Shown here piece by piece: positions 30,315-32,459 of a DNA stretch of 64,000 bases. Location: positions 18,848,001 through 18,912,000 of the forward strand of contig OZ059895.1 in the NCBI GenBank assembly GCA_964057225.1. The letters run 5' to 3'. Every line of letters starts with the position of its first letter. The stretch's first letter is position 1. Below the pieces are notes generated by a model. That model had not been told where the DNA came from, ran no database searches, and worked only from the letters and a program-made list of their open reading frames with translations. Source of the stretch: Auanema rhodensis (lineage: Eukaryota > Animalia > Nematoda). Made by a program: the position numbers and the translations under genes.

Positions 30315-32459
30315 ATGTCTATCTCGTTATTACAATTTTGTGGCCTACATGAAGATTTCAACTGTGGATATTGCAAAAATGAAGAAAAAGCTACACTAGG
30401 TGCTGAAAAAAGTGTTAGCTTGGGTTTGTAATTGTGAAGCTATTATCTATTGCATTTGTTTAAAGAAGCTCTGATTCTCACATTACAGGCTTTTTTGGTA
30501 AAGATACTTGTTATAACTTGTTTATGAGTTTATTAGAGTGCGGGTTTAGTGGGTTAGTAATGAAATTTCGTAAACCTAAGAAAAATTTGTGACGCTCAGA
30601 CTTCTCTTTGAACTTTATTCTGAAATTAATTTTTGAAATATGTCATCTAACCTTTTTTTTTGTTTACAGGAGTCTGGGCGCATGAGTTAACTCCACCAGC
30701 ATATCTCACATTGTTGGATTGTGGTTGGAGAAGGTTTACTATTTGATTTGATTTCTTTAAGTATATATATTTGCAGATCTGGTGATTATGTATATAAGCC
30801 TATTATGGAAAGAACATGTTGTCCGCAATATACAATACGGTTTGGATTTTTCAATAATTGTTTCTATTTTTTATTTTTTAAGATTGGATGCCACTAGATT
30901 TGATTTATCAAAAAGTCAAAAGCGGGTGATGAAAAGGATGAACGATTATCTTAAGTATGATATTAAACCAAAAAGTGGTCCCATTAGAGAAGAAGCTTCT
31001 GCCAATGTACTATTAAGCTATAATGATTCTTTCATTTAATGTCGTTTTTTCCAGCAAATTGTGAGAGACTCTTCGAAAATACCAAAAAATATAGAAAAAC
31101 CAATGCATTCTGCCGAGAAGAAATCTAAAGGAGATATCGTCAAGAAGAAAATTATGCGAAGAGAACGTTGTATCAAAAAATGGCAAGAGAAAAAATTGGA
31201 TGTAAAACTAATGCAACAACTTCGCAGAGAGAAAGTAATTTGATTTTAATTTAAATTAATTAAAATTTCCTGCAATTCAGGAAGCAAGTCGAAAATCAAC
31301 CCTGATATCTCTTTTGCCACCATATGATCCGACATGGAAACACAGGCTTGAGGTTTGCCTATTTTCCAGCTTTCATGAGAGAATTACTGATTTAAAGGTT
31401 GTGTTAGTACGCCCAAAGACTGAATTAGAGTTATCGCGTCGTGAAGAATGCTATGAACTTTTCAAAACATATCAGGCAACGGTAACCTCATATTATATTT
31501 TGTTTGATTCATCTTCAAGTTTTTATTAGGTTCATAATGACACGAACTGTTCTCTAGGATCTTACGATAGATTTCTACTGAAAACTCCTCTTCAGGAAGA
31601 TAGTCTTGAAATTCCTGTTAATCAAGAAGAGTAAGCTAAAACGCATTTTTTTAATCTAAACATTACTTGTTCATAGACCGGTATATGGCTCATATCATCA
31701 ATGGTATATCCTAGACGGTAAAATAATCGCTGTTGGAGCAGTTGATATTTTACCTCACTGTTTGTCGTCAAAATATGTATTTTATGATCCTGAGTTTTCG
31801 TTTTTGAATCTTGGTACTTATACTGCTCTTAGGTAACTTTCAATATACTGCATACCTTTTGCATAAACAATTCAGAGAGATTCTATATACTCAACTGTTG
31901 GCATCTAACAGAAGAGATTTAAAGTATTATTATATGGGCTATTATATTCAAAATTGTCCCAAAATGAGGTATAAGGGAACGTATCGTCCAAGCGAGCTAC
32001 TATGCGACCAAAGTTTCAAATGGGTACGAATTCTAGCATTATTTAATTGAGTATACACTCTTATCAATATTTTGCAGTTTCCGCTTGCTGAATGTGTTGA
32101 GAAGATATTAGCTAATAATGGGAAATATATTCCTTTTGGGAATACATTAGCTGATAGAATGCAACCCTCAGAGCTGAATATATGGCTGAAAGGAACTGTA
32201 TGTATATTCACAGTAAAGCACCAAAAAAAAACATTTTTTCAGATGGCCACATTTGGCCGTATTAGGAACGTGCTAATTCGGAAGAATTCACCATTTGTAC
32301 ATGATATTAGCATGAAAGTGCATGCTGTTTCCAGGTTTTTCTACTTTATAACAATAAGCACCAATTTTTAATTTCAGCCGGCTGTCCCGGGAATGCTCTA
32401 ATCTTGTCTTCTATTTCGATGAAATATGTAAAGCCCTGTTGCAAGCATCCCAGACATGA
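30315..32459 (+). CDS. ate-1: Arginyl-tRNA--protein transferase ATE1
   Basis: [94 protein letters not shown]; last exon less certain. Confidence 0.93.
30489..30552 (+). other. Alternative (duplicated, probably mutually exclusive) ate-1 exon 2a
   Basis: ttacag|64 nt|gttagt, same length and phases as exon 2b (30670-30733); encodes [22 protein letters not shown] vs [22 protein letters not shown]. Confidence 0.7.

What the first reader, a model, noticed from the sequence alone, without database searches (positions are those of the whole stretch)
30424..30733. Cryptic tandem, mutually exclusive exon pair in ate-1 that rewrites the conserved GWRRSG motif
Seen: the unusually long first intron hides a 64-nt exon (30489-30552, ttacag|...|gttagt) with the same length and phases as the canonical exon (30670-30733). 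The translations align: [22 protein letters not shown] vs [22 protein letters not shown]. Including both, or neither, shifts the frame. Established: G(W/F)RRSG is conserved in ATE1/Bpt and lies between the N-terminal metal-binding Cys clusters; mammalian ATE1 has mutually exclusive exons, but elsewhere in the gene. Inference: an independently evolved isoform lacking both arginines, possibly inactive, regulatory or with altered substrate specificity in the N-degron pathway.
Basis: partly seen in the sequence, partly recalled or inferred. Interest (0 to 1): 0.75.

Follow-up and report, generated by a model that had tools for sequence, protein, structure and literature searches.

The report
Alternative exon pair in nematode ATE1
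This nematode's arginyltransferase gene splices in one or the other of two related 64-base exons, making about as much of a form without the conserved Arg-Arg motif as of the normal form; the switch is real but old in nematodes and already annotated in C. elegans, and its function is unstudied.

Summary
Exon 2a (30489-30552) and exon 2b (30670-30733) of ate-1 are both 64 nt, in the same phase, and more alike than chance allows.

In four cDNA libraries from one study, spliced contigs join exon 1 to 2a to 3 and exon 1 to 2b to 3. Contig depths are similar for the two routes. No 2a-to-2b joint was seen. Including both exons, or neither, gives a stop at codon 63 or 73.

It is not a cryptic novelty of this genome. 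The same pair, 2a upstream, is present in all 11 nematode loci examined (clades III, IV and V). It is annotated as isoform pairs in C. elegans (NP_001335527.1 / NP_492549.2), C. briggsae, Haemonchus, Necator, Nippostrongylus and Steinernema. A 2022 paper lists C. elegans ate-1 among genes with tandem duplicated exon substitution.

Exon 2a is a conserved class: W3 is lost, Y12 becomes F, and the first Arg is always lost. The second Arg is also lost here (GFSG). These arginines match human R56/R57 and yeast R79/R80, so a changed substrate pocket is plausible but untested.

I found one thing that my searches did not find described. An intronic element (30583-30614) base-pairs with the exon 2b acceptor. 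It recurs, with covarying bases, in 7 of the 11 species but not in C. elegans. It is probably a splice switch.

The parts
30315..32459 (+). ate-1 (arginyl-tRNA-protein transferase) coding region, 13 exon positions, 464 aa with either exon 2
   Evidence: Hand-built gene model. Eleven of its twelve introns appear as GT..AG joints in the cDNA contigs; the 31234>31281 joint is not listed because of a skipped repeat. Pfam ATE_C matches exons 9 and 10. The product is 56% identical over its full length to Auanema sp. JU1783 ATE1.
30315..30423 (+). Exon 1 (Met to Leu36 plus 1 nt; holds the CGYC cysteine pair)
   Evidence: A cDNA unitig covers 30312-30424.
30489..30552 (+). Exon 2a, 64 nt, encodes [22 protein letters not shown] (no Arg-Arg)
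   Evidence: Joints 30423>30489 and 30552>30777 are present in 4 of 4 runs. It is 18/22 aa identical to the unannotated Auanema exon at L001:3167-3230, with pN 0.10 and pS 0.71.
30553..30669 (+). 117-nt intron between exons 2a and 2b
   Evidence: Low-depth contigs spanning 30540-30694 in two runs look like unspliced precursor.
30583..30614 (+). Intronic arm of a predicted hairpin (core TTGTGACGCTCAGACTTCTC)
   Evidence: This is the conserved block in an otherwise diverged intron (20/27 identical against about 40-55% in the flanks). The duplex with the 2b acceptor has dG -31.5 kcal/mol, z -5.5, with 0 of 300 shuffles as good.
30661..30689 (+). Target arm: last 9 nt of the intron, including the acceptor AG, plus the first 20 nt of exon 2b
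   Evidence: Mean pairing probability at the 2b acceptor is 0.92, against about 0.5 at the 2a and exon 3 acceptors.
30670..30733 (+). Exon 2b, 64 nt, encodes [22 protein letters not shown] (canonical)
   Evidence: Joints 30423>30670 and 30733>30777 are present in 4 of 4 runs.
30777..30839 (+). Exon 3 ([21 protein letters not shown]), the common acceptor for both alternative exons

Best explanation
Shown. 30489-30552 is a genuine alternative coding exon (2a) of ate-1. It is a diverged tandem copy of exon 2b (30670-30733). One or the other is spliced between exons 1 and 3, at roughly similar levels in the four libraries available. Transcripts with both or neither are frameshifted to early stops and so should be removed by nonsense-mediated decay. 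The pair is the orthologue of the annotated C. elegans ate-1 isoform pair and dates to before the split of nematode clades III, IV and V.

Inferred for the protein. Isoform 2a keeps the ATE1 fold but remodels a co-varying set of residues (W3, Y12 to F, R21 to S, R22 to G). This removes the Arg-Arg pair (human R56/R57, yeast R79/R80) that two structural studies proposed as the site binding the acidic N-terminal residue. A third study found that pair to be structural; its R56E mutant shifted on size exclusion and stabilised RGS4 in cells. The most likely result is an enzyme with a changed substrate pocket. A catalytically weak or regulatory form is the main alternative.

Inferred for splicing. 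A conserved intronic element folds back on the exon 2b acceptor and masks its strong 3' splice site. Exon 1 then uses the weaker 2a acceptor, and the 2a donor skips to exon 3. The stability or unwinding of this hairpin would set the 2a:2b ratio.
For: RNA joints and depths. Homology of 2a to 2b. Frame consequences.

Orthologous pairs, always 2a upstream and 64 nt, in Auanema, C. elegans, Mesorhabditis, Diploscapter, Pristionchus, Steinernema, Dracunculus, Brugia, Necator and Meloidogyne. Equal-length annotated isoform pairs. PMC9741552 section 17 lists ate-1.

Class-specific residues: W3 in 16/16 of 2b against 1/20 of 2a; Y12 in 16/16 against F in 16/20; R21 in 16/16 against 0/20. Purifying selection on 2a, pN/pS about 0.14. 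No species' 2a groups with its own 2b on the tree. AlphaFold2 gives the same secondary structure and pLDDT of about 90 over exon 2 for the Necator 2a and 2b isoforms.

The Arg-Arg pair maps to human R56/R57 and yeast R79/R80.

Hairpin: MFE folds. Duplex z of -3.3 to -5.7 in 7 of 11 species. The partner base covaries at exon positions +2, +4, +5, +10, +11, +15 and +20. Internal controls give z near 0.
Against: All RNA evidence is four assembled-contig libraries from one study. Contig depth is only a rough guide to isoform ratio, and rare double-inclusion forms would be dropped.

No biochemical data exist for any 2a isoform. PMC11283454 argues that R56/R57 are more than 10 A from the substrate and mainly structural, so loss of specificity is not the only reading.

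The hairpin rests on energy-minimised pairings, which are complementary by construction. It is absent in C. elegans, Diploscapter, Dracunculus and Brugia, so it is not required for mutual exclusivity. No competing partner for the intronic arm was found in this window.
Confidence: 0.85

Rival explanations
1. Exon 2a is a chance open frame or splicing noise in a long intron, not a functional exon.
For: Only the a priori point that short in-phase AG..GT frames are common: 75 such 64-nt candidates occur in this window.
Against: Its contig depth is about equal to that of 2b in 4 of 4 libraries. Its similarity to 2b has p below 1e-5. It is conserved with an intact frame in all 11 species examined, and pN is far below pS.
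Confidence: 0.01
2. The pair is a recent duplication specific to this lineage. This is the strong reading of 'independently evolved'.
For: The motif is more degenerate here (GFSG) than in most relatives (GWSR).
Against: The position, order, size and diagnostic residues are the same from filarial worms to Caenorhabditis. The window's 2a groups with Auanema and strongylid 2a exons, not with its own 2b.
Confidence: 0.03
3. Isoform 2a is catalytically dead and acts as a regulator (for example a competitor for tRNA-Arg, for substrates or for partners) rather than as an enzyme with a new specificity.
For: Human R56E stabilises the ATE1 substrate RGS4 and perturbs folding. Both arginines are lost here and in strongylids and Caenorhabditis.
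Against: The rest of the protein, including the ATE_C catalytic core, is shared with the active isoform. The co-ordinated, conserved substitutions (W3, Y12F, R21S) look like a remodelled pocket rather than decay. Clades III and IV keep the second Arg, which is yeast Arg80, the residue favoured as the substrate contact.
Confidence: 0.3
4. The complementarity between intron and acceptor is not a splice switch. It could be an inert relic of an inverted partial copy of the exon, or serve another purpose.
For: Four of 11 species, including C. elegans, splice the same pair without it. There are no mutational data.
Against: It is retained with compensatory changes across clades IV and V, in introns that are otherwise not alignable. 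It always covers the acceptor AG. Negative-control pairings give z near 0. Synonymous divergence is lower in 2b than in 2a (pS 0.32 against 0.71; small sample).
Confidence: 0.3

Closest known systems
C. elegans ate-1 isoforms NP_001335527.1 (2a type, ...AEAGWST|SGRY) and NP_492549.2 (2b type, ...LDVGWRR|SGRY), with equivalent annotated pairs in C. briggsae, Haemonchus, Necator, Nippostrongylus, Steinernema carpocapsae and Panagrellus
   Same: Same gene and same exon position. 2a is upstream of 2b. Exons are 64 nt. The 2a signature is the same (no W3, F or M at 12, no first Arg). The flanking genes are the same (CR6_interact upstream, L-type lectin downstream).
   Different: Here and in Auanema the Trp of GW is also replaced (GFSG). 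C. elegans 2b is 67 nt, and C. elegans lacks the intron-acceptor hairpin. In Auanema sp. JU1783 the 2a exon is not annotated.
Mammalian ATE1 exons 7a/7b, mutually exclusive and controlled by competing RNA structures (Kalinina et al., PMC7797038)
   Same: Same enzyme family. It is a tandem homologous exon pair with mutually exclusive use, and intronic RNA pairing is implicated in the choice.
   Different: The exons are different (a 7a/7b cluster; the authors find no exon 7b homologue in invertebrates) and the origin is different. The mammalian mechanism uses several competing and ultra-long-range helices. Here a single local stem masks one acceptor.
Docking-site/selector RNA pairing in arthropod mutually exclusive exon clusters (Dscam1, 14-3-3zeta, MRP; for example PMC4691838, PMC6071210)
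   Same: A conserved intronic element pairs with sequences next to the alternative exons.
   Different: In the window only one partner (the 2b acceptor) is detectable, and the stem covers the splice site itself. Only P. pacificus shows one element able to pair with both acceptors.
Splice-site-masking stems such as the tau exon 10 donor stem-loop (from my own knowledge, not checked here)
   Same: A local stem that hides a splice signal and tunes exon inclusion.
   Different: Those cases concern cassette exons in vertebrates. This one sits inside a nematode mutually exclusive pair and masks a 3' splice site.

Membership tests
ATE1 arginyl-tRNA-protein transferase | ATE_C (PF04377) catalytic domain | tested here: met
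   Exons 9 and 10 match ATE_C with E = 5e-15 and 5e-13.
ATE1 arginyl-tRNA-protein transferase | N-terminal domain with the CxxC and CC cysteines and full-length similarity to known ATE1 | tested here: met
   CGYC and CCPQYTIR are present in the translation. Blastp aligns residues 1-454 to Auanema ATE1 (which carries PF04376 and PF04377) at 56% identity.
ATE1 arginyl-tRNA-protein transferase | G(W/F)RRSG motif | tested here: met
   Met by isoform 2b (GWRRSG) but not by isoform 2a (GFSGSG). Among the proteins in the first protein search, 41 have GWRR and 2 have GMRR. The only 3 exceptions (GWSR) are 2a-type nematode isoforms. Yeast structures have GFRRSG.
Homologous (tandem duplicated) mutually exclusive exons | Adjacent exons of equal length and phase with sequence similarity above chance | tested here: met
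   Both are 64 nt and in phase 1. Score 28, reached by 0 of 100,000 shuffles.
Homologous (tandem duplicated) mutually exclusive exons | Exactly one of the two is present in mature transcripts | tested here: met
   Both single-inclusion paths appear in 4 of 4 cDNA contig sets, and no 2a>2b or 1>3 joint is listed. Caveat: contigs drop rare forms.
Homologous (tandem duplicated) mutually exclusive exons | Double inclusion or double skipping is non-productive | tested here: met
   Stops at codon 63 and codon 73, more than 1 kb upstream of the last junction. Decay by NMD itself was not tested.
Nematode ate-1 exon 2a/2b cluster (as annotated in C. elegans) | Same exon position and order, the 2a-class signature residues, and conserved neighbouring genes | tested here: met
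RNA-structure-controlled mutually exclusive splicing | Complementary arms beyond chance, conserved with compensatory changes | tested here: met
   z of -3.3 to -5.7 in 7 of 11 species. Partners covary at seven or more exon positions. This is computational evidence only.
RNA-structure-controlled mutually exclusive splicing | One docking site competing for two or more selector sequences | tested here: not met
   In the window the arm has no second significant partner (z -1.0 and +0.9). The feature is met only in P. pacificus.
RNA-structure-controlled mutually exclusive splicing | Disrupting and restoring the stem changes exon choice | not testable with these tools
   This needs a minigene or genome editing.

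The most novel reading that the evidence does not exclude
A hairpin hundreds of millions of years old, formed by an intronic element and the exon 2b acceptor, is the switch that sets the 2a:2b ratio in most rhabditid nematodes and was lost in Caenorhabditis. The 2a isoform it releases is an active arginyltransferase with a remodelled N-terminal-residue pocket and hence a different substrate range. That would give a natural test of the disputed role of the Arg-Arg pair.
Probability: 0.3. Interest if true: 0.6.

Novelty: new member of a known kind. Interest (0 to 1): 0.42.

Why it matters
What decides which N-termini ATE1 accepts is an open question. Structural papers disagree on whether the Arg-Arg pair of G(W/F)RRSG binds the acidic substrate residue or only holds the fold together.

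Nematodes have kept a second, well-expressed isoform that replaces exactly this pair, together with two co-varying aromatic residues, since before the split of clades III, IV and V. Comparing the two natural isoforms in an arginylation assay, or knocking out each exon in C. elegans, would address the question directly.

The intron-acceptor hairpin with covariation across clades IV and V is a compact model for RNA-structure control of exon choice in nematodes. It can be tested by mutation. Because C. elegans lacks it, work confined to that species would not have revealed it.

For annotation: the 2a exon is missing from the Auanema sp. JU1783 gene model and mis-joined in some older models.

Tried and rejected
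1. No full-length spliced product of the window could be given to the protein tools by reference. I used exon 9 alone in the exhaustive search and then worked from the relatives it returned.

2. Two word-index searches found no relative closer than Auanema sp. JU1783 (56% identity).

3. MAFFT alignment of the hairpin region of five species (A3) put the 5' arms out of register. I therefore did not use RNAalifold, the count of structure pairs or a covariance model. I used a table of pairs indexed by exon position instead.

4. I looked for a competing partner of the intronic arm upstream and downstream in the window and in Auanema. None was significant.

5. I looked for equivalent pairing at the 2a acceptor and in the other introns. 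There was none, except in P. pacificus.

6. Look-ups of C. elegans P0193 and S. hermaphroditum P0160 returned nothing on record. C. elegans was reached through P0271.

7. Literature. A search for GWRRSG together with arginyltransferase found nothing. The 2014 catalogue of C. elegans mutually exclusive exons (PMC4165533) does not list ate-1. No paper describing the nematode hairpin was found, which does not prove that none exists.

8. The sequencing-run search found no raw-read RNA runs, so stage, sex or tissue specificity could not be examined.

Full report
**The sequence**

On the + strand an ATG at 30315 opens a 109-nt first exon that ends in phase 1 at 30423. Two 64-nt segments follow, each preceded by ..acag and followed by gt: 30489-30552 and 30670-30733. 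Joined to exon 1 and to exon 3 (30777-), they encode [22 protein letters not shown] and [22 protein letters not shown]. Both continue into [21 protein letters not shown].

I built the rest of the gene by hand. It gives a 464-residue protein with either exon. Exons 9 and 10 match Pfam ATE_C at E = 5e-15 and 5e-13. The whole product aligns over residues 1-454 with nematode ATE1 proteins.

The two peptides score 28 in an ungapped BLOSUM62 comparison, reached by 0 of 100,000 shuffles. Of the 75 stop-free AG-64 nt-GT candidates translated in this phase on the two strands of the window, the best apart from the two exons themselves scores 7. With both exons the frame stops at codon 63; with neither it stops at codon 73. 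Both stops lie more than 1 kb upstream of the last exon junction.

**RNA evidence**

Laid on 30200-32400, they show GT..AG joints at the predicted introns of the gene, so they are cDNA.

All four libraries contain both routes. One is 30423>30489 plus 30552>30777. The other is 30423>30670 plus 30733>30777. Contig k-mer depths for 2a and 2b are 25.3 and 27.5, 26.3 and 38.3, 43.1 and 44.2, and 44.8 and 38.9. Where the exon 1 unitig was reported (three of the four runs), its depth is close to the sum of the two branches. Taken at face value, 2a makes up about 41-54% of transcripts. The tool warns that contig depth is a crude measure.

No 2a>2b joint and no exon 1>exon 3 joint is listed. Assemblies drop rare forms, so this shows predominance of single inclusion, not absolute exclusivity. 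A low-depth contig (about 4) spanning 30540-30694 in two runs looks like unspliced precursor.

**Relatives**

An exhaustive search with exon 9, followed by cluster look-ups and profile searches, gave ATE1 from many nematodes. The closest is Auanema sp. JU1783 (CAI4230910.1), at 56% identity.

Several species have annotated isoforms of equal length that differ only in this 22-residue segment:
- Steinernema carpocapsae: TKR95188.1 and TKR95187.1.
- Haemonchus contortus: XGW22168.1 and XGW22702.1.
- Necator americanus: XP_064035674.1 and XP_064035676.1.
- Nippostrongylus brasiliensis: WKX89493.1 and WKX89492.1.
- Panagrellus redivivus.
- C. briggsae: UMM11930.1 and UMM11931.1 (466 and 467 aa).
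- C. elegans: NP_001335527.1, ...ALVIHTISPDNFMWFAEAGWST|SGRY, and NP_492549.2, ...GGAWAHSMTVNDYSGLLDVGWRR|SGRY (484 and 485 aa).

I fetched ten genomic loci. In every one the two exons lie in tandem, with the non-canonical one upstream. Both are 64 nt, except C. elegans 2b at 67 nt. The loci are Auanema, C. elegans, Mesorhabditis belari, Diploscapter pachys, Pristionchus pacificus, S. carpocapsae, Dracunculus medinensis, Brugia malayi, Necator and Meloidogyne hapla. In Auanema the 2a exon (L001:3167-3230, [22 protein letters not shown]) is not in the annotated protein.

The neighbouring genes are shared. CR6_interact lies upstream and an L-type lectin downstream.

On a tree of the 22-residue peptides, no species' 2a groups with its own 2b. 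The 2a/2b label needs only two changes, against 10.6 for shuffled labels. The window's 2a sits with Auanema and then with the strongylids. The duplication therefore predates the divergence of clades III, IV and V.

The literature agrees. Martinez-Gomez et al. [quoted passage not shown] An SF3B1 study notes ate-1 among genes whose splicing events change. The 2014 RT-PCR catalogue of C. elegans mutually exclusive exons does not include ate-1. I found no functional study.

**What distinguishes 2a**

I compared 20 exon 2a and 16 exon 2b sequences.

| Position | Exon 2b | Exon 2a |
|---|---|---|
| 3 | W in 16/16 | W in 1/20 |
| 12 | Y in 16/16 | F in 16/20, never Y |
| 21 | R in 16/16 | R in 0/20 (mostly S) |
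| 22 | R in 16/16 | R in 11/20 |

At position 22, exon 2a has G in the window, Auanema and the strongylids, and T in Caenorhabditis and Diploscapter.

Between the window and Auanema, exon 2a has pN 0.10 against pS 0.71, and 18/22 residues are identical. It is a selected, distinct class, not a decaying copy.

AlphaFold2 models of the Necator 2a and 2b isoforms give the same elements over the segment: strand 43-54, helix 56-63 and strand 68-70. pLDDT is about 90 in both.

A PDB sequence search aligns the segment with human ATE1 (8tzv), so the Arg-Arg pair corresponds to R56/R57 in the numbering of that paper. Yeast structures have GFRRSG.

The structural papers differ on what this pair does. Van et al. 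propose yeast Arg79/Arg80, especially Arg80, as the contact for the acidic N-terminal side chain. The human ATE1 structure paper (PMC11283454) reports that R56/R57 are more than 10 A from the substrate N-terminus and make intramolecular contacts. It also reports that R56E shifts the size-exclusion profile and stabilises RGS4, while S58 and K60 next to the pair lie near the substrate.

I favour a remodelled pocket over a dead enzyme. The substitutions are co-ordinated and conserved, the catalytic core is shared, and clades III and IV keep the second arginine.

**A conserved RNA hairpin at the exon 2b acceptor**

Aligning the window with Auanema shows one conserved block in the 2a-2b intron, TTGTGA(C/G)GCTCAGACT(T/C)CTC. 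It is 20/27 identical, against 40-55% in the flanking intron.

In both species the minimum-free-energy fold pairs this block with the last bases of the intron, the acceptor AG and the first 20 or so bases of exon 2b. Duplex energies are -31.5 and -36.3 kcal/mol, against -16 to -18 (sd about 3) for dinucleotide shuffles, with 0 of 300 shuffles as good.

One difference between the two species is compensatory. The intron has C and the exon G in the window; Auanema has G and C. The exon change is a synonymous Ala codon change.

The same kind of pairing, always covering the AG, is significant in five more species:
- Mesorhabditis: z -3.4.
- P. pacificus: z -4.9.
- S. carpocapsae: z -5.1.
- Necator: z -3.3.
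- M. hapla: z -5.6.

It is not significant in C. elegans, Diploscapter, Dracunculus or Brugia.

I indexed the pairs by exon position in five of these species (window, Auanema, Mesorhabditis, P. pacificus, S. carpocapsae). Positions -2 to +14 are paired in most or all of them. Where the exon base varies (+2, +4, +5, +10, +11, +15, +20), the intronic partner varies with it. At +5, for example, the pair is C-G, A-U or G-C.

Control pairings give z near 0. These were the 2b acceptor against other introns, and the 2a acceptor against both introns. The one exception is P. pacificus, where the same element can also pair with the 2a acceptor (dG -38.4, z -5.4), a docking-and-selector arrangement.

In the window the ensemble pairing probability is 0.92 at the 2b acceptor and about 0.5 at the 2a and exon 3 acceptors. 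The 2b acceptor has the stronger pyrimidine tract (tttttttttgtttacag against ctcacattacag).

My reading, which is inferred, is that the stem masks a strong site. This lets the weaker 2a acceptor be used, and lets the 2a donor skip to exon 3.

Three caveats apply. The pairings come from energy minimisation. Four lineages manage without the stem. There is no experimental test.

**Verdict**

The exon pair is real, well expressed and mutually exclusive. It does replace the conserved Arg-Arg motif. It is not new. It is the local member of an ancient nematode ate-1 exon cluster that is already annotated in C. elegans and elsewhere. It arose independently of the mammalian 7a/7b pair, which lies elsewhere in the gene.

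Three things go beyond existing annotation. The 2a signature is conserved. Both arginines and the tryptophan are lost in this lineage. And there is a covarying hairpin at the 2b acceptor, which I did not find described.

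Noticed in passing
L005:796-842 (Pristionchus pacificus ate-1 intron between exons 2a and 2b): One intronic element can pair with both the 2a acceptor (dG -38.4, z -5.4) and the 2b acceptor (dG -35.6, z -4.9). This is a docking site with two competing selectors, unlike the single stem in the window.
   Followed up: partly
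window 30160-30315: The upstream CR6_interact-like gene ends about 155 nt before the ate-1 ATG. A ttatag acceptor sits 2 nt before the ATG, and the cDNA unitigs start at 30312. This fits SL trans-splicing and possibly an operon. The gene order CR6_interact, ATE1 is kept in Auanema, C. elegans, Diploscapter, Pristionchus, Steinernema, Brugia and Meloidogyne, and the two are fused in some database models (Elaeophora, C. auriculariae).
   Followed up: partly
L001:3167-3230 (Auanema sp. JU1783, GCA_943334845.2): The 2a exon is intact and conserved but absent from the annotated product CAI4230910.1. Older models in other species join both exons into one product (S. carpocapsae UPI0006113189, Globodera rostochiensis A0A914H3V5) or drop exon 3 (M. 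hapla A0A1I8BL08).
   Followed up: partly
window 30553-30563 and L001:3231-3241: The 2a donor region GG|gttagtaat is identical over 11 nt between the window and Auanema although it departs from the usual GTAAGT. This may be a deliberately weak, regulated donor.
   Followed up: no
window 30670-30733 against 30489-30552: Synonymous divergence from Auanema is lower in exon 2b (pS 0.32) than in exon 2a (pS 0.71). This fits an RNA-structure constraint on the 5' half of 2b, but it rests on about 13 synonymous sites per exon.
   Followed up: partly
window 32470-32545: A (GA)n/(TC)n microsatellite of about 50 nt lies just downstream of the ate-1 stop codon. It shows up as ERERER / SLSLSL open frames.
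   Followed up: no
window 33411-34130: The downstream + strand gene is an L-type (legume-like) lectin with a signal-peptide-like start (Pfam Lectin_leg-like, E = 7e-18). The same neighbour is found in Auanema and C. elegans.
   Followed up: partly
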